Of a stretch of DNA of 64,000 nucleotides, positions 3,845 to 48,924 are shown piece after piece. Below the pieces are notes generated by a model. That model was not told the origin of the DNA and searched no databases. It worked only from the letters and a program-made list of their open reading frames with translations. The stretch covers positions 1-64,000 of the IMG/VR virus record IMGVR_UViG_3300025319_000005, one strand, 5' to 3'. Position 1 is the stretch's first letter, and each line of letters opens with the position of its first letter. Position numbers and translations under genes: made by a program.

Positions 3845-4264
3845 TTATGATTTGAAGTTGTATTTTAAATCTGTAGCATCAATTAATTTAAAAAATTTTT
3901 CATCAAAAGTTGAACGTCCAAAATATAATTTTTTTTTAGTTGTAAATTCTTTTAACTTTTCAATGTGCTTTATTCCATTTAAAAATTTGATCACTTCCGT
4001 ACGCTTCATTTTAAACTTTCTTTCAAAGCCAATCCATATTAAATCATCAAACCAAAATATATCACCATAGTCTAAATTTGGCTCTCTAATTTCATATTGA
4101 AACAGAATCTTACCAGCCTTAACATAAAAATAAAAGTTTGGATATTCTTCACATGTATTAATTTCACATCCTTCCAAAAACGAAAGAAAAAACACTTCCA
4201 TATCATTTTTTAGTGAGAATTTTTCAGTTAGTACTTTCCGAGTTATGGACAATTTTACTTTCAT
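3845..4264 (-). CDS. Family A paralog (MKxEL.ITRKVLxEK family), no array
   Basis: ITRKVLTEKFS...FFLSFLEGCEI...YPNFYFYVK...IW..FE.K shared with the array-bearing paralogs. Confidence 0.8.
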   Translation of the reverse strand: MKVKLSITRKVLTEKFSLKNDMEVFFLSFLEGCEINTCEEYPNFYFYVKAGKILFQYEIREPNLDYGDIFWFDDLIWIGFERKFKMKRTEVIKFLNGIKHIEKLKEFTTKKKLYFGRSTFDEKFFKLIDATDLKYNFKS

Positions 4265-4270
4265 AATTTA

Positions 4271-9518: not shown

Positions 9519-10001
9519 TTATGCTATTGATAATTTGCCATTCATTGTTTTTACTATTTGTTCCAACGGAGATTCTATTTTTTGAATTATAGTATTATTA
9601 ATTAAACTTTGAGATTTTATGTAATCATTCTTTTTATTTTGATAATATATTTTTTGCTTATTATTTAAAATTAATCTTTTTTCTTTAATTTTTTCTCTTT
9701 GTTGTTTTAATACTAATCCACAAACTCCTTTGTATAATAAATTTAATCCACTATTTAAACAATCAAATAATTTTATGTAATATGATTCAGCATCATCCAA
9801 TTTTTCTTTTTCGCAAATATGTATTATTTCAAAAATGTGGTTCTCGTATTTATATTTTTTTAAAGAGTTATATAGTTGCCTTTGACCTTTACAATTATAT
9901 AACTTATAAGCATTCCATCTTTTTTCTATATTTATAGATTTACCTATATAAATTTTTCCGTTTGGTGATGTTATTTTATAGATTCCACAAGTTTGTTTCA
10001 T
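9519..10001 (-). CDS. GIY-YIG endonuclease
   Basis: CGIYKITSPNGKIYIGKSINIEKRW; E..YI..F; start overlaps the recombinase stop (ATGA). Confidence 0.85.
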   Translation of the reverse strand: MKQTCGIYKITSPNGKIYIGKSINIEKRWNAYKLYNCKGQRQLYNSLKKYKYENHIFEIIHICEKEKLDDAESYYIKLFDCLNSGLNLLYKGVCGLVLKQQREKIKEKRLILNNKQKIYYQNKKNDYIKSQSLINNTIIQKIESPLEQIVKTMNGKLSIA

Positions 10002-28661: not shown

Positions 28662-29087
28662 TCACTTAAAGTATATTTTTTTTGCCACTTTACCAAATGA
28701 TTTTTGTACTATACAAGATGTATAATCAGATATCAAGCCAACTTCTAATTCATCTAAATAAATACCGAATAGTAAACAAACATTTTCAACTTTAAAATTT
28801 TTATTAATAAGATTTTTTATAAAAGTTTGTATCTGCATATTTGATATTAAATATTTTTCTTTAAACATAAGCCATACTAAATTATATCTAACTCTAAAAA
28901 TATTTGGGACACATTCATATGTAAATAATATTTTATCATTTTTCAAATAAAAAATAGAGCCTGGATATGAATCTAATATTTTAATATCACATCCATCAAG
29001 AATTGAAAGAAAAAAATATTCTATTTCATTCTGAATAGAATATTTTTCAAACAATACTTTCCTAGTTATATGTAATTCTATTTTCAA
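28662..29087 (-). CDS. Family A paralog, no intact array
   Basis: MKIELHITRKVLFEK...FFLSILDGCDIK...YPGSIFY. Confidence 0.8.
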   Translation of the reverse strand: MKIELHITRKVLFEKYSIQNEIEYFFLSILDGCDIKILDSYPGSIFYLKNDKILFTYECVPNIFRVRYNLVWLMFKEKYLISNMQIQTFIKNLINKNFKVENVCLLFGIYLDELEVGLISDYTSCIVQKSFGKVAKKIYFK

Positions 29088-29089
29088 TA

Positions 29090-31084
29090 TTAAATGCCAC
29101 TTAAATTTTTAAATTTTGTTATCTCTGCCCAGTTATTTTCATCTAAATAATACTTTAAAGCTCTATTTTCCGTGTATTTTTCAACCAACACTCTACGGGT
29201 TTCTTTTCTCATTTGCTCTTTAAGACGTTGAGTATTATAGAATTCCTCATCTTTTCGCCAATATCCATATACACAGTAATCACAAGCACATTCATCATAT
29301 CGTTCTTTTGTACATGAAATAGCACTTATGCCATAACGTTTACCTTTTTTCATTTTATGAATTCCAAGGAAGCATAAAATCCTTCCTATTATTTGCAATA
29401 ATCTATTCATCATTTTTCGTAAATGTAACGTTTTCATCAACTATGTAATGAATTCTCAATAACTTCCCATCATCATGCACTGTATTAATACGTTTTAATG
29501 ATTTAACACGATTTTGCTGAAAAACATCAGAATAATCAGATATGTCGTATTTTTCTGGTTTTGATTTTTCTACCAACACTTTCCGGCGCTCTTTATTTAT
29601 TCTTGATTGGAATTTCATTAGATTATATCCATCTTCATCAGGAACCCATTCTGTATAATTAAACTTACCGCGAATACATACATCGTATCTATTATGTTTT
29701 GACCACGCGACACCTTTAAGCTTTTTGTGATAACCAAAAAAACATAAAATTTTGTTATACAAATATACTATTTTTTTCATTATATTTCTTAAATTTCGTA
29801 ATGATTCCAAGCTCTATTAATTCCGATTTTTCTTGCAAAACGCCTACTACTTTCTCTTGCTATTTCTTTAAAATCACCATTTATATGTTTGACACTTCGA
29901 CATTCATTATGCATCTTCTCAAATAATACCCGGCGAGTTTCATCTAAAGTCTGTATTTTAAATAACCAAAGTTTATATCCTTTATTGTCTTCTTTATAGC
30001 GAGAATAGGTACAGTTTTTACATACGTCATATCTCATTTCAGCACACCAAGAAATTCCTTTAATCATGTTATGGATACCATGATAACATAAAAACTTGTT
30101 CCAAAATTTATTAAACCGGCTTTTCATAATCCAATTAAAAATATTCTATTCTATTTGCTGTTTCTTTAAAGGATATTGCTCCAATAGATTTCATCGCTTC
30201 TTTATATTCCAAAAAAGATTTAATATCATCTTTCATTTTAGGAGCCTTTTCAAACAACACTCGTCTTTTCTCTTGAAATAATTTAAGCCTAAATTTTATT
30301 AATTTTGAATGTTCTAAATCAAGAACCCAATAACTAAATTTACAACCCTTACGCTTACAAGCATCATATCTCATATCGTTTGACCAGGTTATACCCTTTA
30401 CAATGTCGTGCTTTTCATAATGACATAAAATCATATAATATAAACTCTTGCCCCAAAGAAATATTTTAAAAAGTAGTTTTATCATGTTTTTTAATGATAA
30501 TCAATTTCCCAATCAGGTTCTTTAAATTTTTCAATTAAAACCTTTCTTGTTTCACGCTGTATTTGTTCTTGGTAAAGTATTAAATTATGCCCTTTAATAT
30601 CTAATTTCCAGAACGTTTTACCACATTTTATACATAAATCCTGTCTGGAGTGAATATACCAATAACAACCTTTCTGTATCTTATGAATACCAAAGAAACA
30701 TAAAATATTTTTTATGTTTAATCTATATAAAAAATTGATTCTCATATTTAAAATTTACCAACATATTTCCCATTCAGAACTTTCATTTAAACCTTGCATT
30801 TTTCTTACTTTTCTTAATATTATATCCTCGTTAATTTGTTTTACAAAAACACTTAATGAATTATCGGTTTTTTCAATTAACACTTTCCTGGTTTGCCTTT
30901 GTGCATTCACACTATACCAAAAAACCTCATATCCATCTTTATCAAATACGTATACCGGCATACCACAATGCTTACACATATCTTTTCTTTGAAATTCGCT
31001 ATTCCAAATATAACCTTTTTTAATATTATGTATGTTGAACCAATAGCACTTAATCCAAAGAAAAATATTTCGAATACGTTTCAT
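29090..31084 (-). CDS. Six tandem Cys/His-rich paralogs (LCFxGxH type) with the tag after the domain
   Basis: 29090, 29403, 29789, 30135, 30491 and 30755 share LC(F/Y)xGxH..KG..W...R.D.C..C followed by (T/R)R(K/R)VLxEK; a seventh, diverged copy at 32801-33184. Confidence 0.8.
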
Positions 31085-31092
31085 TATATGTT

Positions 31093-31605
31093 TTATATGT
31101 CAAATACAATATTTTCTGGAAAATCTTTTTCTATTAGAGTGTGCAATCCTAAATAATTATACTCTTCCCATTCTGATTGAGCCAATTTTGCACAAGGTGT
31201 ATATTCTTTTAATCTACAATTCTGAAATTCTTTTTCCAATGTTGAATTCGATTCAGTTAAACTTTCATCAAGTCCCTTCCAGCCAATATAAGGCATGTAA
31301 TTATTCAAATTAATGTAGTTATATATTATACTTTTTATAAACTCTTGAATTTCTTTATGAGCCATTTGATACTCTTTTTCAAAAACAAACCAGATCATTT
31401 TATACCTTACATAAAAATTCTTGGTTGCTGTTCCTTGTTGAAAAAATATAAAACCATCCTTTATATAAAAAATATTACCCGGATACATATCAGAAACTTT
31501 AAGCTCACATCCATCCAAAAAAGAAAGAAAAAACCCTTCCATATCACTTTTAATGGAAAACTTCTCCGTAAGGACTTTCCTGGTTATAATTAATTCTACT
31601 TTCAT
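31093..31605 (-). CDS. Family A paralog with eroded repeat remnants in the C-terminal tail
   Basis: INLNNYMP and RLKEYTP remnants of LETHxKLEGYTP. Confidence 0.75.
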   Translation of the reverse strand: MKVELIITRKVLTEKFSIKSDMEGFFLSFLDGCELKVSDMYPGNIFYIKDGFIFFQQGTATKNFYVRYKMIWFVFEKEYQMAHKEIQEFIKSIIYNYINLNNYMPYIGWKGLDESLTESNSTLEKEFQNCRLKEYTPCAKLAQSEWEEYNYLGLHTLIEKDFPENIVFDI

Positions 31606-31624
31606 ATATTTTTAATAAAAATGT

Positions 31625-31921
31625 GGTGTATAGCCTCTAATTTTATATATGTTTCCAACTTACCGCCTTTTTTACCTACAACAGCGTTTGGTGTATAGCC
31701 CTCTAATTTTATATGTGTTTCCAATTGCCACACAATAAGCACCTCATCAACTTGGGTGTATAGCCCTCTAATTTTATATGTGTTTCCAATCAGAAAGGGT
31801 TTTACTTTTTTGTGTAATGGGTGTATAGCCCTCTAATTTTATATGTGTTTCCAATTTAAAAAGGTGTACGGAATCACCAAAGCATGGTGTATAGCCCTCT
31901 AATTTTATATGTGTTTCCAAT
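31625..31921 (-). CRISPR. CRISPR-like array A: 5 repeats, 4 spacers, fused to the 3' end of gene 31774-32199
   Basis: Repeat ATTGGAAACACATATAAAATTAGAGGGCTATACACC at 31886, 31820, 31755, 31690 (identical) and 31625 (35 nt, degenerate); unique spacers of 30, 29, 29, 30 nt. Confidence 0.7.
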
Positions 31922-32199
31922 ATATCCTTTATAAACAATTGTGTTTCAGCATAGTTAAGCTCATATTTACTTTCAAAAACTGACCAAATCAAGTCATATT
32001 TAACCCAGAAATACCTATTTTTTAATTCCTGCTGAAATAAAATTAAGTCATTTTTTACATAAAAAACAAAATCCTGATACTTGTCTGAAATTTTAATTTC
32101 ACATCCCTCAAGAAAAGAAAGAAAAAATACATTCATTTCGTGTTTGATGTTAAATTTTTCAAACAACACTTTTCTTGTTATAATTAGTTCTATTTTCAT
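31774..32199 (-). CDS. Family A paralog reading into array A
   Basis: Ends ...LETHIKLEGYTP-CFGDSVHLFK-LETHIKLEGYTP-ITQKSKTLSDWKHI*. Confidence 0.85.
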   Translation of the reverse strand: MKIELIITRKVLFEKFNIKHEMNVFFLSFLEGCEIKISDKYQDFVFYVKNDLILFQQELKNRYFWVKYDLIWSVFESKYELNYAETQLFIKDILETHIKLEGYTPCFGDSVHLFKLETHIKLEGYTPITQKSKTLSDWKHI

Positions 32200-32217
32200 A
32201 TATTTTTAACAGAATGT

Positions 32218-32520
32218 GGTGTATAGCCATCATCTAATTTTATATGCGTTTCCGGCTCGTTTTTGGTGTCATAAAAATAAAAATCAGGTGTATAGCCCTC
32301 TATTTTCACATGTGTTTCCAGCCCGTAAGCGTTATTTTTTGTATAAGCTGAAGGTATATAGCCCTCCAACTTTACATGTGTTTCCAATCAATTGCTATTT
32401 CTTTTATAAACATCAAACGGTATATAACCATCTGACTTTACGTGTGTTTCCAATTTTGTTGTGACGGCTAAGAGAGCAGCTGAAGGTGTGTAGTCTTCTA
32501 ATTTCACATGTGTTTCCAAC
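32218..32520 (-). CRISPR. CRISPR-like array B: 5 diverged repeats, four 30-nt spacers, at the 3' end of gene 32388-32819
   Basis: Repeats at 32485, 32419, 32353, 32287 (36 nt) and 32218 (39 nt, in-frame 3-nt insertion); translate as xETHxK(L/S/I)(E/D)(G/D)Y(T/I)P. Confidence 0.55.
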
Positions 32521-32819
32521 CTATCTTTTATAAAAGATTGAATATCATTATGGTTAAATTTGTATTTCATTTCAAAAACTGACCAAATTAAGTCATACCT
32601 TACATAAAAATGCCTATTTTTTATTTGCTGTTCGAATAAAATCAAGTCATTTTTTACATAAAAAATTGAATATATATATTTTTTACTTAATTTTATTTCA
32701 CATTCATCCACAAAAGAAAGAAAAAAATCTTCCATTTCGTGTTTTATGTTGAATTTCTCAAAAATAACTTTTCTGGTGATTATTAATTCTACTTTCATTT
32801 TTATCTTACCTTTTGACAA
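32388..32819 (-). CDS. Family A paralog reading into array B
   Basis: Stops at a TGA formed at the spacer2/repeat3 junction; track ORF 32196-32387 is the in-frame remainder of the array. Confidence 0.85.
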   Translation of the reverse strand: MSKGKIKMKVELIITRKVIFEKFNIKHEMEDFFLSFVDECEIKLSKKYIYSIFYVKNDLILFEQQIKNRHFYVRYDLIWSVFEMKYKFNHNDIQSFIKDRLETHVKLEDYTPSAALLAVTTKLETHVKSDGYIPFDVYKRNSN

Positions 32820-33152
32820 TACCTTTCATCATCAGCAAATTTTTCAATTAAAACAACCCTTTTTTCTAAACTGATTTTATAAACCTTTTTTAAATGCAAA
32901 ATTCTCTGCAACGTTTCTTTACTTATTGGATTATAAGAGCTAACATGAAAAGAATCGCAATTTTGGCAATCGTAATAACTACATATATCACCTAATGAAT
33001 CATTGTCCCAATTTATCGTGTAACCTTCTAATCCTGAATTTTCAGATTCTTCCTCCAGCCCATAGTTATTTTTAATATACACATGCCGGTTAAAGATATG
33101 ACATTTTATCCACTGTAGAATTTTTTGAGCTTTAGATTTCATTTGTTGTTTT

Positions 33153-33311
33153 TTACCAAAAATTCCATTCATGACCTTTAACAATCCAATTAGGCATAGG
33201 AATGTATTTCTCTATAAGCACTTTTCTTGTATTTTCTGCTATAATTTTTATCTTTTTAGTTGCTTCAATTTCTTTTATTGAGCTATAAAATGGTGAACAT
33301 TTTCTTAACAT
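33153..33311 (-). CDS. 52-aa tagged microprotein (below track cutoff)
   Basis: MLRKCSPFYSSIKEIEATKKIKIIAENTRKVLIEKYIPMPNWIVKGHEWNFW*. Confidence 0.75.
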   Translation of the reverse strand: MLRKCSPFYSSIKEIEATKKIKIIAENTRKVLIEKYIPMPNWIVKGHEWNFW

Positions 33312-33332
33312 AGTTTTTTTAATTAGATGAAG

Positions 33333-33509
33333 TTAATTTATATACTTTTCTATTAACACTGTTCTGGTGTTCTCTTTTATAATTTTATTTCTTTCTATAA
33401 ATTCCATAATAAGTCTTTTCTTGAGCCTAAACTCTTCTATGCGTTTCAAAGAGGCTTCTTTGTTTGATTTTCTAAAATCTAACGAATTATAATATGAATT
33501 TTTTCCCAT
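33333..33509 (-). CDS. 58-aa tagged microprotein (below track cutoff)
   Basis: MGKNSYYNSLDFRK...IIKENTRTVLIEKYIN*. Confidence 0.75.
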   Translation of the reverse strand: MGKNSYYNSLDFRKSNKEASLKRIEEFRLKKRLIMEFIERNKIIKENTRTVLIEKYIN

Positions 33510-33524
33510 TGGATTTCTTATTTT

Positions 33525-33671
33525 TTAACTTTGCATTTTTTCTACCAGAACTTTACGAGTATTCTCTTCTAAAAATTCTTCTCTTAGTTTATTCTTTTTC
33601 CATTTGTATATCTCCGACCTCTTTTGAGCTGCATATTTCTGTTTATCAGGATTATAATTTCTTTGTTTCAT
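33525..33671 (-). CDS. 48-aa tagged microprotein (below track cutoff)
   Basis: MKQRNYNPDKQK...EFLEENTRKVLVEKMQS*. Confidence 0.75.
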   Translation of the reverse strand: MKQRNYNPDKQKYAAQKRSEIYKWKKNKLREEFLEENTRKVLVEKMQS

Positions 33672-33682
33672 TTATTTTCTTT

Positions 33683-33844
33683 TTAAAAATAAATTGAAAT
33701 CAATTTCCATTTTTCTATTAGGACTTTACGTGTGTTCTCTTCTATAAATTTTCTCTGAGCATGCCTTTCTTTAGCAATTTTTCTATAATATTCAATATAT
33801 TCATCAAAAGAAATATCAGAAGCGGTTTTAATTCCAGTTTTCAT
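33683..33844 (-). CDS. 53-aa tagged microprotein (below track cutoff)
   Basis: MKTGIKTASDISF...KFIEENTRKVLIEKWKLISIYF*. Confidence 0.75.
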   Translation of the reverse strand: MKTGIKTASDISFDEYIEYYRKIAKERHAQRKFIEENTRKVLIEKWKLISIYF

Positions 33845-34705
33845 ATAAATTTAATGTAATTTTTTTTTAATTTAAATTTTTCTATTAAAACCGTTCTCGT
33901 ATTCTCTTCTATGAATTTTTTCTGCTTTTCCTCTGCTTCTTTTTCAAATCTACACTTTTTTAACCATAAATAAGCTTCATCAGCTCTGGTTCTTCGTATC
34001 TGAGCATCGCTTTTTTCATTAGTGAACATGGTTGTAAAATATGCTATTTTTGGCTCTTCCATTTTTCTATAAGGACTTTACGTGTATTTTGAATTTTGTA
34101 CCAGGCTTTCTCATTTGGATAAATTGGAACCCATTCTAATATTTCTCCTTTAAATCTCAAATTCAATTCTCTTTCAGCTACACCCATAAGAAATAAAAAC
34201 TTATTTGTCAATTCTAATAATACAGGTTCATCAATTTCATCATCCCAACGAATAAACTCATAGTGCTTCTTACTAGTTTCAAATATGTACCGGTGATACC
34301 AATAAATATTTGACCAATGTTGTTGTGTTACCTGAGAAAATGGAATTTTAACCCCATCTTTAGTTGTCCAAACTTCCTCAAATACTCCAGCCTCAGTTTC
34401 TTCTAAAAACGGCTTATATTCGAATATCGTCTTTAAATTGTTTTCAACTTTTTCCATGACTTAATTCATTGTTATATCACTATACGAGAAATAATTGATA
34501 CGTGTTACAACTTTATTGGTATTCGACACAATTTTAGCAATTTTTGACTCAAATATGTTTTTTCTATTAAAACCCTCCTAATGTATATTATATCTGGCAC
34601 AGTCATCATTGCCCGACCGTACTTAATAATATCAAATGCCTCTTCTTCGCTTATTCTAAAACGAGCCAGCATCTCTTTTATCTCAAAATCATATAGATAC
34701 CTCAT
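33841..34705 (-). CDS. Three small proteins with C-terminal tag (33841-34062, 34044-34457, 34505-34705)
   Basis: EENTRTVLIEK, IQNTRKVLIEK, YIRRVLIEK. Confidence 0.75.
34473..34509 (-). promoter_or_regulatory. ECF-type phage promoter copy 14 (variant)
   Basis: TGTAAC-N17-CGTATAGTGATATA; the TAA of TGTAAC is the stop of ORF 34505-34705. Confidence 0.7.
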
Positions 34706-35210
34706 TTTTCTTTGAAAGTTCTTTAAATGATGTTGTAGCTAAATTTAAGCTAGAAGGATGATATTCACCTAAACTTTTAAATTCTATTATTTCTTTAGCA
34801 AGTATAAATGAACCTCTTACCGGCATACAATCATTTTTTATTTCATTTTCCAATATCATCCAATCTTTAGAATTCTTAATAGAACCCATTGAATATGGTG
34901 AATAACCATTAAGTTTTATACTGTTCTTTAGTAAACCTTTTATAAGTATTTGTGTTTTAGCATAGCTAAACCCAAATTTCATTTTAAAAACTGACCATAT
35001 GATGTCATATCTGACATAAAAAAACTTATATTTAATTTGTTGATGAAATAAAATCATATCTTCTTTTACATAAAAATAAAGCTCCGGATATTCTTTACTC
35101 GTTTTAATTTCACATCCTTCGATAAAAGACAGAAAAAACTCTTTTGCACCTTCTGTAGAAGAATATTTCTCGGTTAGGACTTTTCTCGTTATGACTAATT
35201 CTATTTTCAT
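34689..35210 (-). CDS. Family A paralog with a fossil 22-aa-period tail
   Basis: LKNSIKLNGYSP...ILENEIKNDCMP-10aa-IIEFKSLGEYHP-10aa. Confidence 0.75.
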   Translation of the reverse strand: MKIELVITRKVLTEKYSSTEGAKEFFLSFIEGCEIKTSKEYPELYFYVKEDMILFHQQIKYKFFYVRYDIIWSVFKMKFGFSYAKTQILIKGLLKNSIKLNGYSPYSMGSIKNSKDWMILENEIKNDCMPVRGSFILAKEIIEFKSLGEYHPSSLNLATTSFKELSKKNEVSI

Positions 35211-35767
35211 TTATCAAATAAGTTTATAGTGCTCCATAAATCACCAAGTATTACTGGTGTATAACCCTCCAATTTCACATGTGTTTCCAACAAAGATTTA
35301 GGACTAGGAAATACTTCTTTAGGTGTATAACCCTCCAATTTCACATGTGTTTCCAACCAAGCCCAGGATTGTATTGCACCACCAACAGGTGTATAACCCT
35401 CCAATTTCACATGTGTTTCCAACTTTTTTTGCAGAATATTAATTCTCCCAACAGGTGTATAACCCTCCAATTTCACATGTGTTTCCAACCTATCCTTTAT
35501 AAAAGATTGAATATCACTATAGTTAAGTTTATATTTGTTCTCAAAAACTGACCAAATTAAGTCAAATCTCATATAAAAATACTTAATTTTTGTTTCCTGT
35601 TCAAACAAAATCAAGTCATTTTTTACATAAAAAATAAAATTCGGGTATTTTTTACTTAATCTTATTTCACATCCATCAATAAAAGAAAGAAAAAAATCTT
35701 CCATTTCGTGTTCAATGTTAAATTTCTCAAAAATAACTTTTCTGGTTGGAATTAATTCTATATTCAT
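35207..35767 (-). CDS. Family A paralog fully translating array C
   Basis: Four exact LETHVKLEGYTP modules separated by unrelated 10-aa peptides. Confidence 0.9.
   Translation of the reverse strand: MNIELIPTRKVIFEKFNIEHEMEDFFLSFIDGCEIRLSKKYPNFIFYVKNDLILFEQETKIKYFYMRFDLIWSVFENKYKLNYSDIQSFIKDRLETHVKLEGYTPVGRINILQKKLETHVKLEGYTPVGGAIQSWAWLETHVKLEGYTPKEVFPSPKSLLETHVKLEGYTPVILGDLWSTINLFDK
35256..35489 (-). CRISPR. CRISPR-like array C: 4 identical 36-nt repeats, three 30-nt spacers, entirely inside the ORF
   Basis: GTTGGAAACACATGTGAAATTGGAGGGTTATACACC at 35454, 35388, 35322, 35256. Confidence 0.7.
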
Positions 35768-36015
35768 TTTTATAATACTTAAACGAAAAATCCTGTTATT
35801 TGTTCATATTTTGTCTCCTGTTTTCTGTCCAGATTCGTCATTTATTTTATTAAAAACAAGCAACTGGCCATTTATATTAAACCCAAATTCAGAAAAATGA
35901 CAATCATTGCATTGATAAATCTCATGTATTGTTCCTTGGTTTATACATAAACCATTATCTTTCGGTGTAATTTCATAATCACATTGAAAACATATTTTAT
36001 GCCCGGTTTTGTCTT

Positions 36016-38716
36016 TCAATGTTTTATTTTTACCAAATTTAATATTCTCCTATTATTATTTAATGTTCTCCTATTATTCCATGTTCTACATACAAATTCT
36101 CTAAACTCAATATAATTATCCAATTCCTCATAAGAAATATAAAATTCTGATACATCATAAAATATGATTTTTCTCATAGGAATAAATGTTGTCGGGTGAT
36201 AAAGATTTTCACCTATAACATAATTCGTGTTGTTTCCCATCATTGGAGATAGAACTTTACTGGCTATGTAATTAATGCCGTTTATATTTTCTGTTCCCCA
36301 AATACAAGACTTTTGATTTATAACAAACATCTCTTTATAAGCCTTTTTCCATAACTCATAAGAAATAAGCATCAAAAGACCATGCTCTGAAAAATTAGAA
36401 AAGGATAAATACTTTTCAGTTAAAACCCGGCGTGTTAATTTCATTAAAGTATTCGTAAATAATTAACTAATCCAAGTGTATGCAAATAATCAATTACAAG
36501 TGTTCTTAAATTAACACCATTCTTTAAAAAAGAAGAAATATCTTCAGTGTAACAATAAGTTGTAATGTGATAAAATGGATTCAGCTCACCCATATTTTTA
36601 TTTTTTAAAGTTAAAGTTATTATCCTGTTTTCCATGCTATCACCAATTCTATTTAATTCGCTTATGTGATATAAATCAATTTTTTGTCCAGTAACAGGAC
36701 AAATAATTTTTGAAACAATGAATACAATCCGTTCTAAATTATTTTTATTCTCAATTCTTTTAAACGTAATATCCCATAATTTATCCGGAACATCTTCTAT
36801 GTTCGTATATCTCCAAAATGGCGAGGATTTCTCTATCAGGACTTTACGAGTTAAAGTATTGCTCATCTTGTATTTTCCATTAAGATGTTTTGTGCTTGTT
36901 CCTCCAGAATATGTCAATAATATCTCTTAAAAATTCACCAGTTGAAAAATCAGATACCATTGTGTTTAACGTTGAAAATGGCATGTTAAAATAATAGTGG
37001 TTGAAAATTATCTTTCTTTTGCTATCAGAAAGTGATAAATATAACATTTCTACTTCTGAAATTGTAAAATCCTTTTCATGCATTAGTGGCGATAAAATTT
37101 CATAAGCCAGGTATTCTATTATTTTATCCGCTCTTTGAGATTCTACTACAGTATCCGATATTTTAAGCATAGAATCTCTAACCTTATTCCAGATATGCTC
37201 CGGAACCTCAAGTGGGAAATTGTATTTCCAAAAAGGTGAGGATTTTTCTGTCAAAACTCGACGTGTTAAACTTTGATGTTCCATTTAAATCATTAAATTA
37301 CAATTGTTTAGCTCAACATTACATTACTACATTCTATACATAATCCCATGTCAGGATTATTAGGATAGTCTTTTTCATATCCTATTTTCGTAAACGTCTT
37401 TTCTCCACAACAATCACAAGAAGTTAAACATTCACTCACAAACATACTACCTGAAATCCTAATATGATAACCTTTCTTTTTTAATGTACCTATAGAGCTG
37501 CCTTTTTCTATTAAAACATGACGTGTTAATGTGTTGTTCATGTTATTTCTCTCCTTAAAAATTTTGAACTACATTTCATTGAATATTCCCACAGTATCTC
37601 AATAGTTTCTTTTAACATAAAAGAACTCTGATAGTGACGCTTATTACATAACAAATTCATAGACACTTCAAAATAACAATCGTTGTCGAAAATTATATCC
37701 CTATAAGAATAAGCGAAATTGTTATTTACGAATTTTATAGGTGAAATAGTAAAATCCTCTTTTATGAGCGGTGATAGAATTTGACCGGCAATGTAGTGTA
37801 TTAATTTATCAGCTATTTTTGTTTCACCCGTATCATTAAACATGTCTTGAATTATATTAAAATGCTTCAGCCACAATTTCTCTGGAACCAAACTTGGATT
37901 CGGATATCTCCAAAAATGTGAGGATTTCTCTATCAGGACTTTACGAGTTAAAGTGTTCATGTTATTTTCCATTTAAAATATATTCTATATTATACTTTAA
38001 TCCAATGTAACTATATATATCTGATAAGTCTACTAATGTTTCACGCTCAACTTTTAACGACTTTATTTTTCTATTGATTCCAGCAAACTCTATTAAATGA
38101 TGTGCCGGACGAATCATAGTTGTGGGTCGTATATTTGGATGTTTTGTTGTTGTTATTGCATAAGGAACATAAGTTATATTGTAATTTCTCATTTTTAGCA
38201 TAGGAGATATGATTTTTTCTATAACGAATTCCAATACTATGATACCATTATTTAAATTTCCTTTACTGGCTAAAATTTCAAAATTAAGTTCTTCTGCGAC
38301 TTTTATCCACATAATCCAAGGCACGTCATCCACATTTGAATAACGCTCGAAAAGTGAGGATTTCTCTGTAAGGACTTTCCTGGTTAAAATATTATTCATC
38401 ATAAAGATAAAAATTTATCAAATCCCATACTACATCTTTCACATAATCCAATATCGGTAATTCCAAAAAAAAATGACTCATAACCAATTTTTACTTGTGT
38501 TCTTCTTTTGCAGAAATCACAAAATTCCAACTCAGCTCTTGAAAAAATTTTTGTACCAAAAGGATGTATTTTTTGAAAATAACCTCTATTCTTTAATTCA
38601 CCTACAAAAGAATAAGATTTTTCAATTAAGACTTGACGTGTTAAGGTGTTGCTCATTTTTATGTTTCTATGCGTGTTTTTTAAATGCAAAGGTAGAAAAA
38701 TTATTGCACAAAACAT
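36016..38716 (-). CDS. Cluster of seven tagged proteins: five SSPFWRY-type paralogs (36016, 36444, 36880, 37538, 37962) and two Zn-finger paralogs (37308, 38399)
   Basis: LTR(K/R/H/Q)VL(I/T)EK near each N-terminus; VP..LW...ILSP in the first group; CD.C...KIGYE...GLC..CS in the second. Confidence 0.8.
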
Positions 38717-39538
38717 CGAAAATAACCCAGCAAATTTATATGAAATATATCCGGTTTTTTGGGAGCGCTGGAGTAACAGGAGAGTGGTAGGATTTTATAT
38801 TAAATAAAAATTAAACCCAAGTTGATGTTGTGGAAAATGTTATATAGTTAAAATGATATAAAACTACATTTATTAATGAAAACATATATATTTAGCAAAT
38901 TCATCGCCATAAAATCCGGTATCCATACACTTTTTACACTCTATATGGGAAGTACTATTGCTAATGTTTTTTAGATTATGTTTCTCATTAAAATATTCTA
39001 AACTTTCTAAACTTTTCTGTAAAAATTCTTTTATCGGAACAATATTTTCTCTCATTTCTTCTAGTTCTTCCTGTAAAATTATTTTCACTTTTTCGGTATC
39101 ACTGTTTTGGCAATTAACGTAATGCCTTCCATAGCAATTTGAATCGCTAAAACAAGTATTATTTTCTCCTATTTCTAATGGTAAAATTTCATGAATAATT
39201 GTCATTAGGTGATTTAGCAACTCTGTTTTAGTGTCGCAAATTATTTCAATTTCTGTTTTCATAATTTTTTAGTTTTTATAATTGTTTTTTAGTTAGCAAA
39301 CGCTAAATTTATTTCACCAGTTAAGTAACACCACGTATCATCAATTATTTCTATTGAATAAGTGTATAAAAACTTCTTACACATCATTTCTATTTGCTCC
39401 TTATTGTTAATATGGAACAAATATTTATCAAACTTCTTGTTTGATTTCATTTGTTCCCAAATTTGACCACATTCAAATCCGTGTGTGAACGAATTAGATT
39501 GGTCATTAAATGACATTACAAGATTAAAGTCTTCCATA

Positions 39539-40099
39539 TTAGTGAAATCTTTTTTTGTTTGTTCTTATTGTTTTATTTTTTTCGTTAATTATTTCATTAT
39601 ACATAGGCAAATCCACCACTTTGCAATACATGAAATATGATTGTTCATTCTCGTTTTTAAAATCAAATGAATGTTTGAAATTTAACGCTTCAAAAAACTT
39701 TGGTCTTCTTGATGATGTGACAACTACTGAATCAGAATTACTTTTTTCAATAATTTCTTTCAATCGTAAATACGTTAGATACTTTCCAATACCTTTTCTT
39801 TGATAATCATGGTGAACTGTGCCAAATGATAATTCTAATACATTAGAAGATGTATGCGACCATAGCCAGCTCCCGCATCCAATTATTTTACCGTCAAGTA
39901 ATGCAATGTAATATGTTGGTCGATAATTAATATTCGTGAACGAACAGATTAATTCTTCTTCAATATCTGCTTTCGAATAAGTAAGCCAAATACCTTCTCT
40001 TTGGTATGTATTCCATATTAAATCAGTTAACTCATTTATTTTTCTTATTGTAAGTTTTTCAAAATTAACATCTCCTACATTTTTAAAATTCTTTGTCAT
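39539..40099 (-). CDS. GNAT-family acetyltransferase
   Basis: IIGCG, VHHDYQRKGIGKYL (motif A), FFEALNF. Confidence 0.85.
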   Translation of the reverse strand: MTKNFKNVGDVNFEKLTIRKINELTDLIWNTYQREGIWLTYSKADIEEELICSFTNINYRPTYYIALLDGKIIGCGSWLWSHTSSNVLELSFGTVHHDYQRKGIGKYLTYLRLKEIIEKSNSDSVVVTSSRRPKFFEALNFKHSFDFKNENEQSYFMYCKVVDLPMYNEIINEKNKTIRTNKKRFH

Positions 40100-40741
40100 A
40101 ATAAAAACTTTTATTTATTCCTTGATTCGCCTTTTCCATCGTATTTACCATTAGACGAATTGAGAGCCCAGCCAACTCGTTCAATTTCATTAAATTCCCA
40201 AGGCCTATTTATCTTACCATCTTCTGATATTGTCAAGTATTCTCCATTACGTCTCATCGGTGCTTCTATTAACCAAGGAGTAGGTTCCGGCTCACAAACA
40301 AAAAAATCATTTTCATCCATACCTATAGGATTAGTTCCAGACATTGTTATTGCTCCTTCTGGTATTGGTCTTAGGTTTTCTGGTTTTTCCCATTTAATTC
40401 GTGTATCTTTAAATAATTCATTAACGACACTAATATCTTTATTTGACCAAGGCGTTAATTCTTTTTGATGTTCATATCTTTTTGATAACCAGTATTCATC
40501 ATTATTTGTTTCTAATACATATTTTTGATGGAGAATTTTTTTACATGCCGTGCTGTATTCATCTATAGTGTTTTGAGTATCTTGCTGTGCTGATTTATAT
40601 TGTTCTTCGCCAACATAACGACCGTGTCGTGTTTCATGAACATTTTTTTGAATATCTAAGTATGCTAATAGTGTTTTGAATGAATTTTCGGAAATAATTA
40701 TATTACCAGTACCGTCTTTTATTGCTTCTATTTTTTTCATT

Positions 40742-41707
40742 TTATATTTTATTTAAATTTATGTTTTTCATTATTACAAAGTCATTTTTATCTTCAAAAT
40801 CACCGCCATCTATATTGCCAAGACAATTTTTATCACAATATTCACCAACTGTTCCTATTATTTCAAATCCTTCTCGCTTATAAAAATTAAGAGGCCTACC
40901 ATCTTTATCTACATATGAATAAATTCGTTCACAACCAACACTTTTAGCAAATGCATATAAATGTTCCATCACCTGCGTTCCTAATTTAAGGTTTCTTAAT
41001 TCAGGCACAATTCCCAACCATCCAAGCCATAACTCCTTAGTATCGGTTGCTCCATTAAGTGTATATAAACCACAGACACCAACTTGTTTGTTTCCAAGTT
41101 TGATTAACCATACTTCCCATAGTCTATCGCTTTGTGCGTTATCAGATGGGATAATTTCACACCAAACAAGCATAGTTTGATAAAATATTGGGGTAAAATC
41201 TTCTGCAAGAGGCTTTAACACCTGAGAGTAATCGTAAATATTTCTTGTTTTAAAAAAAGATAGTTTATTATTCAGAACTTTTTGCATTATTGAATAGTTT
41301 TCGCCATTGTGCGTTAATTTTTTATTCAGAATCCACCCTCTTTTATTATGATAATCGTAAGCATCTATTGTATCTAAGTAAATTACTTTATAATTATGGT
41401 CAATAGCCCATTTATATCGTATTTTAGATAAAAGTTCACCATATCCGTTCCCCCGATATTGTGGCTCAACCCAAAGGAGTGTATTATAAGGGGATATATC
41501 TAATCCTTCTCCATCTCTTTCTGTATCAAATACACCAGTCGCCATTGGCATATTATTAATTAATCCGACATAACAAATAGAATCTTTGTCATTAATTAAC
41601 CATCTATCAAATTCAACATTAGCTTCTTCGTTCTGCACATTCCAACGCAGTTGAATTATAGAAGTAACATATGACCTATGAGATTCGTTTATTTCAATTA
41701 TTTTCAT
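40742..41707 (-). CDS. Tandem two-domain GNAT acetyltransferase
   Basis: VEPQYRGNGYG...YHNKRGW and IVPELRNLKLGT...FYKREGF. Confidence 0.85.
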   Translation of the reverse strand: MKIIEINESHRSYVTSIIQLRWNVQNEEANVEFDRWLINDKDSICYVGLINNMPMATGVFDTERDGEGLDISPYNTLLWVEPQYRGNGYGELLSKIRYKWAIDHNYKVIYLDTIDAYDYHNKRGWILNKKLTHNGENYSIMQKVLNNKLSFFKTRNIYDYSQVLKPLAEDFTPIFYQTMLVWCEIIPSDNAQSDRLWEVWLIKLGNKQVGVCGLYTLNGATDTKELWLGWLGIVPELRNLKLGTQVMEHLYAFAKSVGCERIYSYVDKDGRPLNFYKREGFEIIGTVGEYCDKNCLGNIDGGDFEDKNDFVIMKNINLNKI

Positions 41708-43113
41708 TTTTTATAAATTTTAAAATATAATCTGGTTTTGGTAAATCATTGTAATTTCTTATTCTGAGCTTCGTTCCTTCGTCATTATACCAACCATTAT
41801 CTGATACCATATTATTTTTTTCAAAAACACCACAATGTCCATAGTCAAACCGCTTAATACTTATTATTTGACCGTCTTCTGTTATTTTATGTGGTTGCCA
41901 ATACCCTTCAGTTGAGCTTTTACCTTTACCTGTCCAAATTAATATACAACCTATTTCTGGCTCTTTTAAATGTTCAAAATCTTTGCTTTCATATAAATCT
42001 TTTATTGTTGGAGTTGCATTGTCCCAATTGATTAAATGAGCCAGACCAATCCTTTTTAATGGATATGTTTTACAACTATCTCTATGAGTTATGGTTACTT
42101 CAAATAATTTCATTAATTATTAGTTTTTAATAGGTGTTATTATTCCATCTTTAATTTCAAACTTATGATTTTCTTCTTTTGAAACTTCAATATACACTGA
42201 TTCATAATTTAATATTTGTCCTTGTTCATTAACAGGTGTGAAATATTTTGCATCGTAACCTACTAAATTACCATGATTTAATTCTTCAAAATGCATTGCA
42301 TATTTGCAATCTTTGATTCTATATCCGACATGATAGAAACACTTTGCCAGCGTGTATATCGTACCATGCTGCGGAACATCAGCTTTATTACATAATAAGT
42401 TAACATCAATCTTTCCTATGTTTGTATTACATATAAATTTGTTTATTTCTTTCATATTGTTTTATTTAATCATAGAAGTGATTTTGCTAGTTCTTTGAAA
42501 TAATTATATTTTTCACAATAGACATAAATATAACTTAAACAGCCAGAAATATAAAAAATCAAAAGTTCAATATTATACATTCTGTGTCAGTCATTTGTTA
42601 TTTTTGAATAGTTCTTATGTATTGTACTATCTCTTCTTCAAAAGAAGGTTGTATTGTTGTATATATATTCATTGATAGTCCGGTTGTGTTTAAAAAATCT
42701 ATAAAATTTAAAAAATCTTTATGTAATTCGGTTGGATTACTTTTTAAATTATAAAAATAAATTCCGTCGCCATTTTGAGAATCCTTATGAATAAATTCTA
42801 CTCCTTCAGAAACAATATCTGGTGCTATAATTTTTAACGTTTTTAAAATATCTGGGAAGTTATCATTAAATTTATCATTAAATTCATATAATTTTGTGTA
42901 ATAATCATTATTAATAATTTTAATAACAATATTTGCTCCACTAAGAATACGATTAACGTATGTCTTTAATGATTTTTCATTTTTAACAACACTGTTTTCT
43001 CTTGTTTTAAAAGAAAAATAATCAGAAAAATTATTATAGAATCTTCCATTTTTTAGATAAATTACATCTGTTTTCATTTTATTTCTATATTAGTTAATAC
43101 TTTTTTCTAAATT

Positions 43114-43911
43114 TTACATTTTTCCATCAATAAGATTTTTATCTTTTTCTGAATTCAGCTCTCTATATGTTTCAAATATTTGAAAATTCATCCAAGCCAT
43201 TATCTCTAGTAAATTACATATTCCATATTTTTGAATATGCTTTTTTAATTCAATAGAGTTGAAACCACCTTCAACATCACCTATTTTCTCTTGTCCTGTT
43301 TCAGTATCAATCACAATAGATATTTTATTTGTTTCTGTATTATATTTATATTGTAATAATTCTTTCATTTTATTTTCAATAAATTTAGATTTATTAATCG
43401 CCAGTTTATCAGCTAAAATATTAAATTTTTCAAAAATTTCTTCTGTTATTGTAAATGTAACTTTTTTCTTCCTAAGATTACATTCCATAAATGATAACTC
43501 AATAACACGATATGGTTCAGAAAGTGTTTTAACCCATAAAACACAAACAGAAACAATATACAAAAATGGAAAACTTTGTATTTTTTCTAAATCATATGGA
43601 CAAGTAATAGTCATAGTTCTAATAGGTGATAATTTATGACGAGTTGCATCATCAGCCTCTTCTTCGTAAATATCTAACTCACCCCTATCATTAACTGATC
43701 GATTTTCAGTAGACCCTAACCATATTGTTTGTTTTAAGTCAAATAATCTTTGAATATTATTTCTAATAGAATCTGACTCTTCTAAGTTGTAAGAAGTGTC
43801 TTTATGTATTTCTGTATAACATTCTCTGTCTTCAAGTATATTAAGTAATTTTTCAAAAGCTTGTTCTTTTTCATTTGAATCTTTATAAGGTTCGTGTTTT
43901 TCTGTTTTCAT
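43114..43911 (-). CDS. Hypothetical multi-domain protein with an internal ribbon-helix-helix-like segment
   Basis: KKKVTFTITEEIFEKFNILADKLAINKSKFIENKMKEL. Confidence 0.4.
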   Translation of the reverse strand: MKTEKHEPYKDSNEKEQAFEKLLNILEDRECYTEIHKDTSYNLEESDSIRNNIQRLFDLKQTIWLGSTENRSVNDRGELDIYEEEADDATRHKLSPIRTMTITCPYDLEKIQSFPFLYIVSVCVLWVKTLSEPYRVIELSFMECNLRKKKVTFTITEEIFEKFNILADKLAINKSKFIENKMKELLQYKYNTETNKISIVIDTETGQEKIGDVEGGFNSIELKKHIQKYGICNLLEIMAWMNFQIFETYRELNSEKDKNLIDGKM

Positions 43912-44029
43912 TTTTTTTTCTAAGTAATATAATTATTTATTTGCAAGTATATATATTATTTATATTATTGTCAAGTAAATTTATAATTATTTTTAATAAT
44001 ATTAGTAAATTCCAAAATCCAGTTGAAAG

Positions 44030-44581
44030 TTATTTGATTTGTAAAAAATTTGTGAGCACTGGATGGTCAAGGTTTGGTTTTACCAATTTTAGATGTGCGT
44101 TAGATAAACGACCCATTCTCCATTTACCAGCACCAGGTGTATAGTCCTTAAGTTTTATATTTGTTTCCGATATGTTTACACCATTACCAGAAGATGTATT
44201 TGGCGTGTATCCATTCAAATTTATAAGTGTTTCCAACGTTTGTGCCGCATTGGCGATTGGAATTATTGGTGTATATTCATCCAATCTTATATGTGTTTCT
44301 AATACGTCTTTTATAAACGACTGAGTTTTAGAATAACTAAATTTATATTTGTCCTCAAAAACCGACCAAATTAGATCGAATCTCACATAAAAATACCTGT
44401 TTTCTGTTTCCTGTTGAAATAATAATAAGTCATTTTTCACATAAAAAATATAATGTGGATGTTTGTCTGAAATTTTTAATTCACACCCCTCTATAAAAGA
44501 CAGGAAGAAATCCTCCATTTCGTGTTTGATGTGAAATTTCTCAAATAGGACTTTCCGAGTTATGGATAGGGTCGTTATCAT
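44030..44581 (-). CDS. Family A paralog translating degenerate array D
   Basis: LETHIRLDEYTP-10aa-LETLINLNGYTP-10aa-SETNIKLKDYTP-10aa; TACATTTG host promoter box upstream. Confidence 0.85.
   Translation of the reverse strand: MITTLSITRKVLFEKFHIKHEMEDFFLSFIEGCELKISDKHPHYIFYVKNDLLLFQQETENRYFYVRFDLIWSVFEDKYKFSYSKTQSFIKDVLETHIRLDEYTPIIPIANAAQTLETLINLNGYTPNTSSGNGVNISETNIKLKDYTPGAGKWRMGRLSNAHLKLVKPNLDHPVLTNFLQIK
44136..44303 (-). repeat. Degenerate CRISPR-like array D: 3 repeats, two 30-nt spacers, in frame
   Basis: 36-nt repeats at 44268, 44202, 44136 with an exact 66-nt period. Confidence 0.6.
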
Positions 44582-47448: not shown

Positions 47449-48924
47449 TTAATCTAAAAACTCTTTCCAAAAGTCTTTGCGGAATGTGGATATGACCTTA
47501 CGCTTATATCTATGTCCCATTGTTCCGTCACAAAAACTCATTAATTTAATAAATTTCTCATTTAACATAGATTTCTGGATGTTTTCAAAATTTATAGGTT
47601 CATCAACAATGGCATAAGCAAATTGAGTTAAACCGTATTCTCCTGTTTTATCTATTATTGGTTTTGAAATTCCATTACTCCATATTACCTTAGGTGTATT
47701 AAAATGACCATTTTTAGATAATGACCAAAATAGATTTACCGTTCCATCTTTTAATATAGTATAGACACAAGGGTATTTAAAATCTTCTGTTTTTTCTTTT
47801 GACATGTGTTTTTTGTCACTACCATAAGCAGACCGACTATACAACACCTCAACTTTTTCTTCTCCCTCTTTTGCTATTAACTTTTGTATTTCATTAAACA
47901 TTCCATTAGGAATAAATTCCATATTTGAAATATCTAATTTTTCAATAATTCCATCTTGACATTTAATTGTTGTTATTGTATTATTTGAGGGAGAGTTTTT
48001 AATGCAATAAAAATCAAAAGTAGTTTGTACGCCAAACATTTTAACACCATCTTCTCTGTTGTGTAAATTTAAACTTAATATTTTCTTTGACCTTAATAAA
48101 GTTTGAATTGTTTTAAATCCACCATCAAAATCTCTCCAATTGCTAGGGTGAACACCAACAAAATAACCAGCTTCAACCAAACAACTTTCAATTGATTTTT
48201 TAACGAATTTATCCCAAAGTGGTTGTGACTTTTTATTTCCTTCTTTAAGCTCTTGATACGGAGGATTCATCACAATAACATCAAATTTTTCAATTCCCCA
48301 TATCTCTCTCGTGTGTTCATCAAATTTTTCATCCAAAAACGAACCATTATATATATTCAAAGAATATTCATCATTAGGATCAAAAGCACAAAGGAATAGA
48401 AACATATTTTTAGCTTGAAGTTCACCAACGTATAATTGATTTTCTACTATGTGTTTATATCTTAATTCCTCATCTGGTTCAAATTCCTTAAGACCATACA
48501 TAAGTCTATTTACAATAACACTTGAAAAAATACCACAACCGTTACAAGGGTCTAAGAATTTCAATTTAGGATTTGACCAAACTTCTTTAGGTAAAGTATC
48601 AAGCATATCCTGTACAAGAGAAATTGGCGTCATAACCTCTCCGAAGGCTTTTTTCTCCACTTCTCCTACTTTAACGTATTCACGTAGCATTTTGACTATT
48701 TCTTTGCTGTAATGATATTTTCCAATACTTTCATCCTTCATCATGTTTTTTACCTTGATGAATAAATCTCTATCACCATCCAAAATAGATAAAATAGCCA
48801 TTCTTTTCTTGCTGGTACTTAAACCCTCAAGTGTTATTTTAATGTCTTTATCAATTCCTGACACTTCATCAATCATCATTTGGTCGATTAATGTTTCAAA
48901 TTGATTTTTCTTTGCGTTTGTCAT
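47449..48924 (-). CDS. N6-adenine DNA methyltransferase (Eco57I/type IIG-like M+TRD)
   Basis: GEVMTP, FLDPCNGCG, FDVIVMNPPY. Confidence 0.9.
   Translation of the reverse strand: MTNAKKNQFETLIDQMMIDEVSGIDKDIKITLEGLSTSKKRMAILSILDGDRDLFIKVKNMMKDESIGKYHYSKEIVKMLREYVKVGEVEKKAFGEVMTPISLVQDMLDTLPKEVWSNPKLKFLDPCNGCGIFSSVIVNRLMYGLKEFEPDEELRYKHIVENQLYVGELQAKNMFLFLCAFDPNDEYSLNIYNGSFLDEKFDEHTREIWGIEKFDVIVMNPPYQELKEGNKKSQPLWDKFVKKSIESCLVEAGYFVGVHPSNWRDFDGGFKTIQTLLRSKKILSLNLHNREDGVKMFGVQTTFDFYCIKNSPSNNTITTIKCQDGIIEKLDISNMEFIPNGMFNEIQKLIAKEGEEKVEVLYSRSAYGSDKKHMSKEKTEDFKYPCVYTILKDGTVNLFWSLSKNGHFNTPKVIWSNGISKPIIDKTGEYGLTQFAYAIVDEPINFENIQKSMLNEKFIKLMSFCDGTMGHRYKRKVISTFRKDFWKEFLD

What the first reader, a model, noticed from the sequence alone, without database searches (positions are those of the whole stretch)
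31625..44303. Protein-coding CRISPR-like arrays: each repeat+spacer adds a 22-aa module to a phage protein C-terminus
Seen: four of eight family A paralogs run into arrays of a 36-nt repeat with unique 29-30-nt spacers (A 31625-31921, B 32218-32520, C 35256-35489, D 44136-44303). The first repeat is the natural end of the protein domain (LETHxKLEGYTP; array-less paralogs have related residues there). The 66-nt period keeps frame, giving 12 constant + 10 hypervariable residues. Of 13 spacers, 12 are stop-free in the frame set by the preceding repeat; my rough expectation for random sequence is about 50% per spacer, so this looks selected. Established: 36-nt repeats with 30-nt spacers are the geometry of type II and VI-B arrays, and Cas1-Cas2 duplicates the repeat at each insertion. 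No cas or reverse transcriptase gene is in the window. Inference: a possibly undescribed system in which spacer acquisition (host or distant phage Cas1-Cas2, or another integrase) diversifies a protein tail, or a dual-function locus yielding both protein and guide RNAs.
Basis: partly seen in the sequence, partly recalled or inferred. Interest (0 to 1): 0.95.

Follow-up and report, generated by a model that had tools for sequence, protein, structure and literature searches.

The report
CRISPR-type arrays fused to phage genes
A huge phage carries real CRISPR-style repeat-spacer arrays whose first repeat is also the last 12 codons of a small phage gene, so new spacers lengthen the reading frame; this arrangement appears undescribed, and read-through looks mostly like a side effect, not a proven purpose.

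Summary
Four arrays of a 36-nt repeat with unrelated 29-30-nt spacers lie at the stated coordinates. Each starts inside the 3' end of one of eight paralogous genes, and 12 of 13 spacers are stop-free in the repeat's frame.

Related phage contigs show these are CRISPR-type arrays, not drifting tandem duplications:
- Near-identical genes carry different spacers. Distal spacers are shared and gene-proximal ones are new.
- The last repeat is truncated or degenerate.
- Spacer lengths are 29-32 nt, mostly 30.
- Spacers are richer in G+C than the phage.

The repeat is 70-73% identical to the Cas13b (type VI-B) repeat of Bergeyella and Capnocytophaga, but it lacks that repeat's terminal stem and shows no covariation. 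The first repeat encodes a structured part of the protein domain and evolves like coding sequence. No cas gene lies nearby, and no bacterial genome carries this repeat.

Reading through the arrays is not a general rule: one third of 99 spacers break the frame and about 30% carry an in-frame stop. It is nevertheless over-represented in this phage (13 of 16) and obligatory in one relative, a 760-aa five-domain polyprotein.

Most likely a Cas1-Cas2-type integrase adds spacers at a repeat-like gene end and selection filters the outcome. The function is open.

The parts
35207..35767 (-). Family A gene C (186 aa). The domain is residues 1-105. The ORF then reads through all of array C and ends in an ATGA overlap with the next family A gene.
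   Evidence: structure model
35256..35489 (-). Array C: four identical 36-nt repeats and three unique 30-nt spacers, all in frame and stop-free.
31774..32199 (-). Family A gene A (141 aa). The ORF ends inside the third repeat because spacer 2 is 29 nt.
31625..31921 (-). Array A: four identical repeats plus a terminal repeat with a 1-nt deletion; spacers 30, 29, 29, 30 nt.
32388..32819 (-). Family A gene B. The ORF stops at a TGA formed at the junction of spacer 2 and repeat 3.
32218..32520 (-). Array B: five diverged repeats, the last with an in-frame 3-nt insertion, and four 30-nt spacers. Its distal part is an ORF (32196-32387) that ends in an ATGA overlap with gene A.
44030..44581 (-). Family A gene D (183 aa). 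It reads through array D and 30 further codons.
44136..44303 (-). Array D: three diverged repeats and two 30-nt spacers, in frame.
34689..35210 (-). Family A paralog without an array. Residues related to the repeat (LKNSIKLNGYSP) sit at the domain end, followed by a 68-aa tail.
31093..31605 (-). Family A paralog without an array (IYNYINLNNYMP at the domain end).
28662..29087 (-). Family A paralog without an array.
3848..4267 (-). Most divergent family A paralog (HMM E = 1.7e-24), without an array. Coordinates are stop-to-stop.

Best explanation
These are CRISPR-type repeat-spacer arrays built onto the 3' end of a large family of small phage genes.

Shown:
- The 36 nt that code for the end of the last helix and the C-terminal tail of the family A domain act as the first repeat.
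- New units of about 30 nt of foreign DNA plus a copy of that repeat appear next to the gene. Older units are shared between strains, and the last repeat decays.
- Because 36 + 30 = 66 is a multiple of three, an insertion without a stop keeps the ORF open and adds 22 residues. Other insertions truncate the tail.

Inferred:
- The insertions are made by a Cas1-Cas2-type integrase. The most likely source is the host, of the type II-C kind that serves Cas13b arrays in trans. One encoded elsewhere in the 503-kb phage genome is also possible.
- It acts on a gene end that resembles a type VI-B repeat.
- Read-through translation is mainly a consequence that selection filters. It is kept in frame where the downstream tail, a translationally coupled gene or a fused domain matters, as in this phage.
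- Any use of the transcripts as guides or decoys for a Cas13b-like effector is possible but unproven.
For: - **Array anatomy and uniqueness of spacers:**
- **Always at a family A gene end:** 81 of 87 arrays in 918 kb of related phage DNA are preceded in frame by a family A domain. The other six are cut by contig ends or are chance hits. Every other 65-67-nt periodic array found also lies at a family A gene end.
- **Turnover at 99-100% identical genes:** L019 carries spacers 62,63,64,65 and L021 carries 66,67,64,65. L005 has 15,16 and L011 has 22,23,15. L025 and L026 share their two distal spacers. Protein variants P0011/P0036 and P0001 versus ORF C show the same pattern.
- **Terminal repeat:** truncated after about 22 nt in relatives.
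- **Spacer lengths:** 30 nt (66), 29 (22), 31 (3), 32 (8). This matches the 28-32 nt, mostly 30, reported for II-C/VI-B acquisition in Flavobacterium columnare, where VI-B acquires in trans (PMC8092290).
- **Foreign-looking spacers:** G+C 37.5% against 30.0% for random 30-mers of the same loci (sd of the mean 0.9%).
- **Link to type VI-B:** a pattern satisfied by the phage repeat finds arrays only in Bergeyella zoohelcum and two Capnocytophaga species, directly downstream of Cas13b (NF038190, E = 6.7e-252). Identity is 23-27 of 37-38 aligned columns, z = 3.6-6.5.
- **First repeat is protein:** first and second codon positions are nearly invariant and third positions vary across 37 diverse genes. 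Its residues have pLDDT 97 in a model with mean pLDDT 91.8.
Against: - No cas gene is among the 20 largest ORFs of the window, within 10 kb of any related array, or in the 10 kb beyond the window's end.
- The repeat is absent from 185,579 bacterial and archaeal species genomes.
- No protospacer was found for any spacer tested.
- Arrays with repeats only 56% identical (my hand count, arrays C and L031) coexist in one genome, which demands a tolerant integrase.
- The window's repeats do not fold, lack the CAAC-3' end and poly-U loop that define VI-B repeats (10.1101/092577), and show no covariation. Use by Cas13b is therefore doubtful.
- The strict tie to a single gene family, across 1,861 clusters, suggests more than accidental integration.
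Confidence: 0.55

Rival explanations
1. Protein-level purpose, the first reader's idea: spacer acquisition is used to diversify a C-terminal tail or an inter-domain linker. Each unit would add 12 constant and 10 hypervariable residues that matter for the protein's function.
For: - The first repeat is a structured, protein-constrained part of the domain.
- In this phage, 13 of 16 spacers (including the fifth array in L031) are both 30 nt and stop-free, against a null of 0.37-0.56.
- First spacers are stop-free in frame in 40 of 51 cases, against 30 and 26 in the other two frames.
- L019/L021, L020 and array C are fully open.
- P0088 is a 760-aa ORF with five domains joined through 13 diverged repeats, and domains 2-5 lack their own start codon.
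- Repeat divergence in arrays B and D is concentrated at third codon positions: 15 minimal changes against 6 and 6.
Against: - One third of 99 spacers break the frame, and 32% of the 87 spacers outside the window's contig carry an in-frame stop.
- Arrays of up to seven repeats continue after a stop in the first spacer (L066, L006, L071).
- Reading frames wander within single arrays (L026).
- Translated spacers show no shared pattern.
- Third-position bias in distal repeats is also expected if each repeat is a copy of the coding first repeat taken at a different time.
Confidence: 0.15
2. Functional phage mini-arrays at the RNA level: the family A transcripts are processed by a host Cas13b-like effector into guides against competitors, or into decoys that displace host guides.
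For: - Repeat similarity to Cas13b repeats, the same 36+30 geometry and the same gene-to-array orientation.
- Several arrays per genome.
- Viral mini-arrays and repeat mimics are known strategies (PMC11656645, PMC10651486).
- Huge phages often carry compact arrays without cas genes (PMC7162821).
Against: - The GUUG/CAAC terminal stem and the poly-U loop are missing.
- The window's repeats fold at -0.5 to -1.8 kcal/mol, no better than shuffles.
- The inner stem pairs in 68.2% of cells against 67.9% in shuffles.
- Repeats vary like codons.
- No identical host repeat was found.
- No targets were found.
Confidence: 0.2
3. Ordinary tandem duplication in a repeat protein, or a multi-core peptide precursor, with hypervariable inserts produced by point mutation.
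For: - Constant motif plus variable 10-residue inserts.
- In-frame spacing of 22 residues in 93 of 95 cases seen at the protein level. That sample can only see in-frame cases.
Against: - Repeats are identical at the DNA level while spacers are entirely unrelated.
- Spacer content is replaced wholesale between genes that are 99-100% identical.
- Spacer G+C differs from the genome.
- Frame-breaking lengths and stops are common.
Confidence: 0.03

Closest known systems
Virus-borne CRISPR mini-arrays (reviewed in PMC11656645) and the compact cas-less arrays of huge phages (PMC7162821)
   Same: Short repeat-spacer arrays in a viral genome without adjacent cas genes, presumably dependent on machinery supplied in trans. 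Arrays are compact: 1-7 repeats here.
   Different: - Known mini-arrays carry repeats identical to those of the host, and mostly spacers against related viruses. Here no bacterial genome has the repeat, and no target was found.
- Here the first repeat is coding sequence of a conserved gene, and every array is tied to one gene family.
- There are at least five arrays per genome.
Type VI-B (Cas13b) CRISPR arrays of Flavobacteriales, e.g. Bergeyella zoohelcum
   Same: 36-nt repeat, 30-nt spacers, a 5' GTTGGA start and an internal GAGGGT. The repeat is 70-73% identical, the array follows a gene in the same orientation, and adaptation genes are absent from the locus.
   Different: No cas13b. No CAAC-3' end or poly-U loop. 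No stable fold in the window's repeats. Spacer lengths are more variable (64% are 30 nt outside the window's contig, against 98% in the bacterial arrays). The leader is a protein-coding gene.
Solitary repeat units / RNA anti-CRISPRs (Racr; PMC10651486)
   Same: Phage-encoded mimics of CRISPR repeats without cas genes.
   Different: Racrs are non-coding single repeats next to promoters. That survey found none of type VI and masked predicted ORFs, so it could not have seen these. Here the repeats are coding and form arrays.
Spontaneous ('neo') CRISPR arrays from off-target Cas1-Cas2 integration (from my own knowledge of work in E. coli; not checked here)
   Same: Integration at a repeat-like site outside a canonical array, which duplicates that site.
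   Different: That is a rare laboratory event at scattered sites. Here it is recurrent, polarised and confined to one gene family across many phages.

Membership tests
CRISPR array (generic) | Direct repeats of constant length separated by unique spacers of similar length | tested here: met
CRISPR array (generic) | Polarised spacer turnover between strains, with the distal end shared | tested here: met
CRISPR array (generic) | Degenerate or truncated terminal repeat | tested here: met
   Arrays A and B; relatives. Array C has none.
CRISPR array (generic) | Associated cas genes | tested here: not met
   The rest of the 503-kb genome was not seen.
CRISPR array (generic) | Spacers match foreign genetic elements | tested here: inconclusive
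   No convincing protospacer. The G+C content argues for a foreign origin.
CRISPR array (generic) | Non-coding leader upstream of the first repeat | tested here: not met
   The upstream sequence is a conserved coding domain.
Type VI-B (Cas13b) array | 36-nt repeat and 30-nt spacers | tested here: met
   compared with bacterial arrays
Type VI-B (Cas13b) array | Repeat with complementary 5'-GUUG and CAAC-3' ends, a poly-U loop and a conserved fold (10.1101/092577) | tested here: not met
   GUUG is present, CAAC is absent, and there is no covariation.
Type VI-B (Cas13b) array | Repeat sequence similar to repeats next to cas13b | tested here: met
   (23-27 of 37-38 aligned columns identical)
Type VI-B (Cas13b) array | cas13b next to the array | tested here: not met
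Viral mini-array | Repeats identical to those of the host's CRISPR system | tested here: inconclusive
   No match in 185,579 species genomes. The host is unknown.
Viral mini-array | Spacers target related viruses | tested here: inconclusive
   One weak AT-rich hit, 23 of 25. Four 24-mers found only themselves in IMG/VR.
Repeat protein / multi-core peptide precursor | All units kept in one reading frame | tested here: not met
Diversity-generating retroelement | Reverse transcriptase and a template repeat related to the variable region | tested here: not met
   No reverse transcriptase among the ORFs scanned. Spacers are unrelated to each other and to the window.

The most novel reading that the evidence does not exclude
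A sequence-acquisition machinery of the CRISPR kind has been harnessed, or is at least exploited by selection, to write new peptide modules into proteins. Captured 30-nt DNA pieces would become hypervariable 10-residue inserts in the tails and linkers of a large phage protein family. That would be protein diversification by acquired DNA rather than by mutation.
Probability: 0.12. Interest if true: 0.95.

Novelty: new variant of a known kind. Interest (0 to 1): 0.75.

Why it matters
- **Dual coding:** a CRISPR-type array can be nested in a protein-coding gene, with one 36-nt element serving both as a structural part of a protein and as the array's first repeat.
- **Adaptation on phage DNA:** CRISPR-type acquisition appears to operate on phage genomes in nature, at rates that outpace point mutation.
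- **Type VI-like repeats in viruses:** a published survey found none (PMC10651486). Its method masks ORFs, which suggests such elements are systematically missed.
- **Experimental handle:** the locus offers a natural test of how tolerant the integrases that serve Cas13b arrays are.
- **Protein-level possibility:** if the protein-level reading proves right, it would be a new way of making protein diversity.

Tried and rejected
- **Rfam:** nothing at gathering thresholds on the window, and no CRISPR repeat family in permissive scans of two arrays. No tRNA genes.
- **Protein family libraries:** Pfam, PHROGs, NCBIfam and PADLOC on family A gave nothing consistent. A PDB profile search found nothing.
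- **Fold search:** no PDB match; in BFVD only uncharacterised proteins of uncultured phages, best TM-score 0.63.
- **Profile comparison with Cas13b:** no relation.
- **Repeat in cellular genomes:** the first genome scan, using the phage repeat pattern, gave no hit.
- **Literature search for the repeat sequence:** no paper.
- **Protospacer searches:** all spacers against about 1 Mb of related phage DNA; the arrays against 50,697 phage records and 72,556 plasmids; four spacers as 24-mers against IMG/VR. Only self-matches and one weak AT-rich hit came back.
- **tracrRNA-like anti-repeat in the window:** none.
- **Cas13b relatives in IMG/VR:** none found, though this method has low sensitivity.
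- **Bacteroidota promoter motif (TAnnTTTG):** not enriched upstream of genes, so uninformative about the host.
- **Walking the rest of the 503-kb genome for cas genes:** abandoned as too costly at 10 kb per look-up.
- **Decayed repeat copies in the array-less paralogs:** seen by eye but not significant by HMM.
Full report
**What is in the window**

The window is the first 64 kb of IMG/VR contig IMGVR_UViG_3300025319_000005 (212,632 bp) with identical coordinates. The same phage is in NCBI as a 503,412-bp record, GCA_902731165.1. G+C is 29.6%. Genes between 28 and 47 kb all lie on the minus strand and are tightly packed.

On the minus strand the repeat of array C is GTTGGAAACACATGTGAAATTGGAGGGTTATACACC. 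Array A differs from it at five positions. The repeats of arrays B and D have diverged from one another. The 13 spacers are unrelated to each other.

An HMM of the upstream domain finds eight paralogs in the window. Four of them run into arrays. A ninth paralog outside the window, on the same contig, carries a fifth array with a different repeat (56% identical to that of array C, by my hand count). Its three GC-rich 30-nt spacers are all in frame.

**The coding claim**

Twelve of 13 spacers are stop-free in the repeat's frame. The proper null is about 57-62%, not 50%. This comes from the other frames of the same spacers and from all six frames of 42 spacers in bacterial Cas13b arrays.

- ORF C reads through its whole array and ends in an ATGA overlap with the next family A gene.
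- The distal part of array B ends in the same kind of overlap.
- ORF D reads through its whole array.
- ORF A ends in its third repeat because of a 29-nt spacer.

Counting all five arrays of this phage, 13 of 16 spacers are both 30 nt long and stop-free, against a null of 0.37-0.56. That gives p between about 4e-4 and 0.03, depending on the null.

**Relatives**

The family is large: 87 homologs in a word-indexed search, and 1,861 clusters at 50% identity in a full HMM scan. Almost all are of unknown function and come from environmental phage contigs, several longer than 200 kb.

I collected 81 loci. In 918 kb of phage DNA, every array with 65-67-nt periodicity sits at the 3' end of a family A gene. 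Repeats are always 36 nt. The commonest type encodes LEETLKLEGYTP. Other lineages have variants such as VEEHYKLRVTTT or VETDLKLGSTTP. Arrays have one to seven repeats, and the last repeat is usually cut after about 22 nt.

Of 99 distinct spacers, 66 are 30 nt, 22 are 29 nt, 3 are 31 nt and 8 are 32 nt. Outside the window's contig, 59 of 87 are stop-free in frame, against 43-54 in the other frames. Many arrays continue after a stop in the first spacer, and frames shift within arrays. An open frame is therefore not a general requirement.

Some lineages are nevertheless entirely open: L019/L021, L020 and array C. In L082, five domains and 13 diverged repeats form one 760-aa ORF whose inner domains lack start codons.

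**Why these are CRISPR-type arrays**

- Genes that are 99-100% identical carry different spacer sets, with distal spacers shared and gene-proximal ones different. Examples are L019 versus L021, L005 versus L011, and L025 versus L026. At the protein level the same is seen in P0011 versus P0036 and in P0001 versus ORF C.
- Spacers average 37.5% G+C, against 30.0% for random 30-mers of the same loci.
- The length spectrum equals that reported for II-C/VI-B acquisition in Flavobacterium columnare. There the Cas13b array acquires spacers through the II-C Cas1 in trans, despite different repeats and leaders (PMC8092290).

**Relation to Cas13b arrays**

A pattern that the phage repeat satisfies finds arrays in only three genomes among 185,579 species: Bergeyella zoohelcum and two Capnocytophaga species. 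In those the array lies directly downstream of Cas13b in the same orientation. Phage repeats share 23-27 of 37-38 aligned positions with that repeat, and no shuffle does better.

The defining features given for VI-B repeats are complementary GUUG and CAAC ends, a poly-U loop and a conserved fold (10.1101/092577). Only the GUUG end is met:
- The window's repeats do not fold.
- Across 56 phage repeat variants, the inner stem pairs no more often than in shuffles.

**The first repeat is protein**

Over 37 diverse genes, its first and second codon positions are almost invariant while third positions vary. The exceptions are the end codons TTG and ACA, which are also fixed at the third position.

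AlphaFold gives a confident model (pLDDT 91.8) of a small alpha/beta domain. The repeat-encoded residues 94-105 complete the last helix and the tail at pLDDT 97. The fold has no match among solved structures.

**Interpretation**

The formation mechanism is well supported: polarised, ruler-like insertion of about 30 nt together with duplication of 36 nt. The only known process that does this is Cas1-Cas2 integration.

The enzyme was not found. It is absent from the window, from the 10 kb beyond its end, and from the neighbourhood of every related array. The host is unknown.

Function is open. I rank the possibilities as follows:
1. An integration hot spot whose products are filtered by selection on the reading frame.
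2. RNA-level use with a Cas13b-like effector.
3. A protein-level role of the inserts.

**Novelty**

Viral mini-arrays, repeat mimics and cas-less arrays of huge phages are known (PMC11656645, PMC10651486, PMC7162821). I found no description of arrays fused in frame to a gene family, nor of type VI-like repeats in viruses. The published survey of viral repeat units found none of type VI and masked ORFs.

Noticed in passing
window 29000-38720, minus strand: At least 25 small ORFs from several paralogous families share a peptide motif T-R-(K/R/T)-V-L-(I/T/F/V)-E-K. It is N-terminal in family A and in the 36016-38716 family, C-terminal in the ORFs at 33153-34705, and internal in the Cys-rich family at 29090-31084. 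Codons differ between copies, so it is conserved as protein, not as DNA. Relatives have MKYIITENKL at the start of family A genes and of neighbouring genes.
   Followed up: partly
L031:10205-10430 (same contig, about 199.3 kb): A fifth family A array of the same phage lies outside the window. Its repeat differs (it encodes LEELLKLQGYKT). Its three 30-nt spacers have G+C of 53, 53 and 37% and are all in frame.
   Followed up: yes
L082:6001-8283: A 148-kb phage contig (G+C 43%) has five family A domains and 13 diverged 36-nt repeats fused into one 760-aa ORF. The inner domains have no start codon of their own.
   Followed up: partly
L007:10942-11394: An ORF that looks like the tmRNA partner SmpB (judged by eye) lies between two family A arrays of a 75-kb phage contig.
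   Followed up: no
L061:3673-6498 and L036:4434-7181: An SNF2-type helicase and a DnaB/primase-like protein near family A genes carry intein or homing-endonuclease domains.
   Followed up: no
window 6960-8066, 9998-10855, 10965-11795, 47449-48924: A sigma-70-like factor, a tyrosine recombinase and two DNA methyltransferases are encoded in the window. None is a cas gene.
   Followed up: partly
L027, L029 and L030 (near positions 0-1400); L035 near 1400; L036 near 13200: Other tandem repeats with 60- and 63-nt periods occur in related phage contigs. They are not at family A genes.
   Followed up: no
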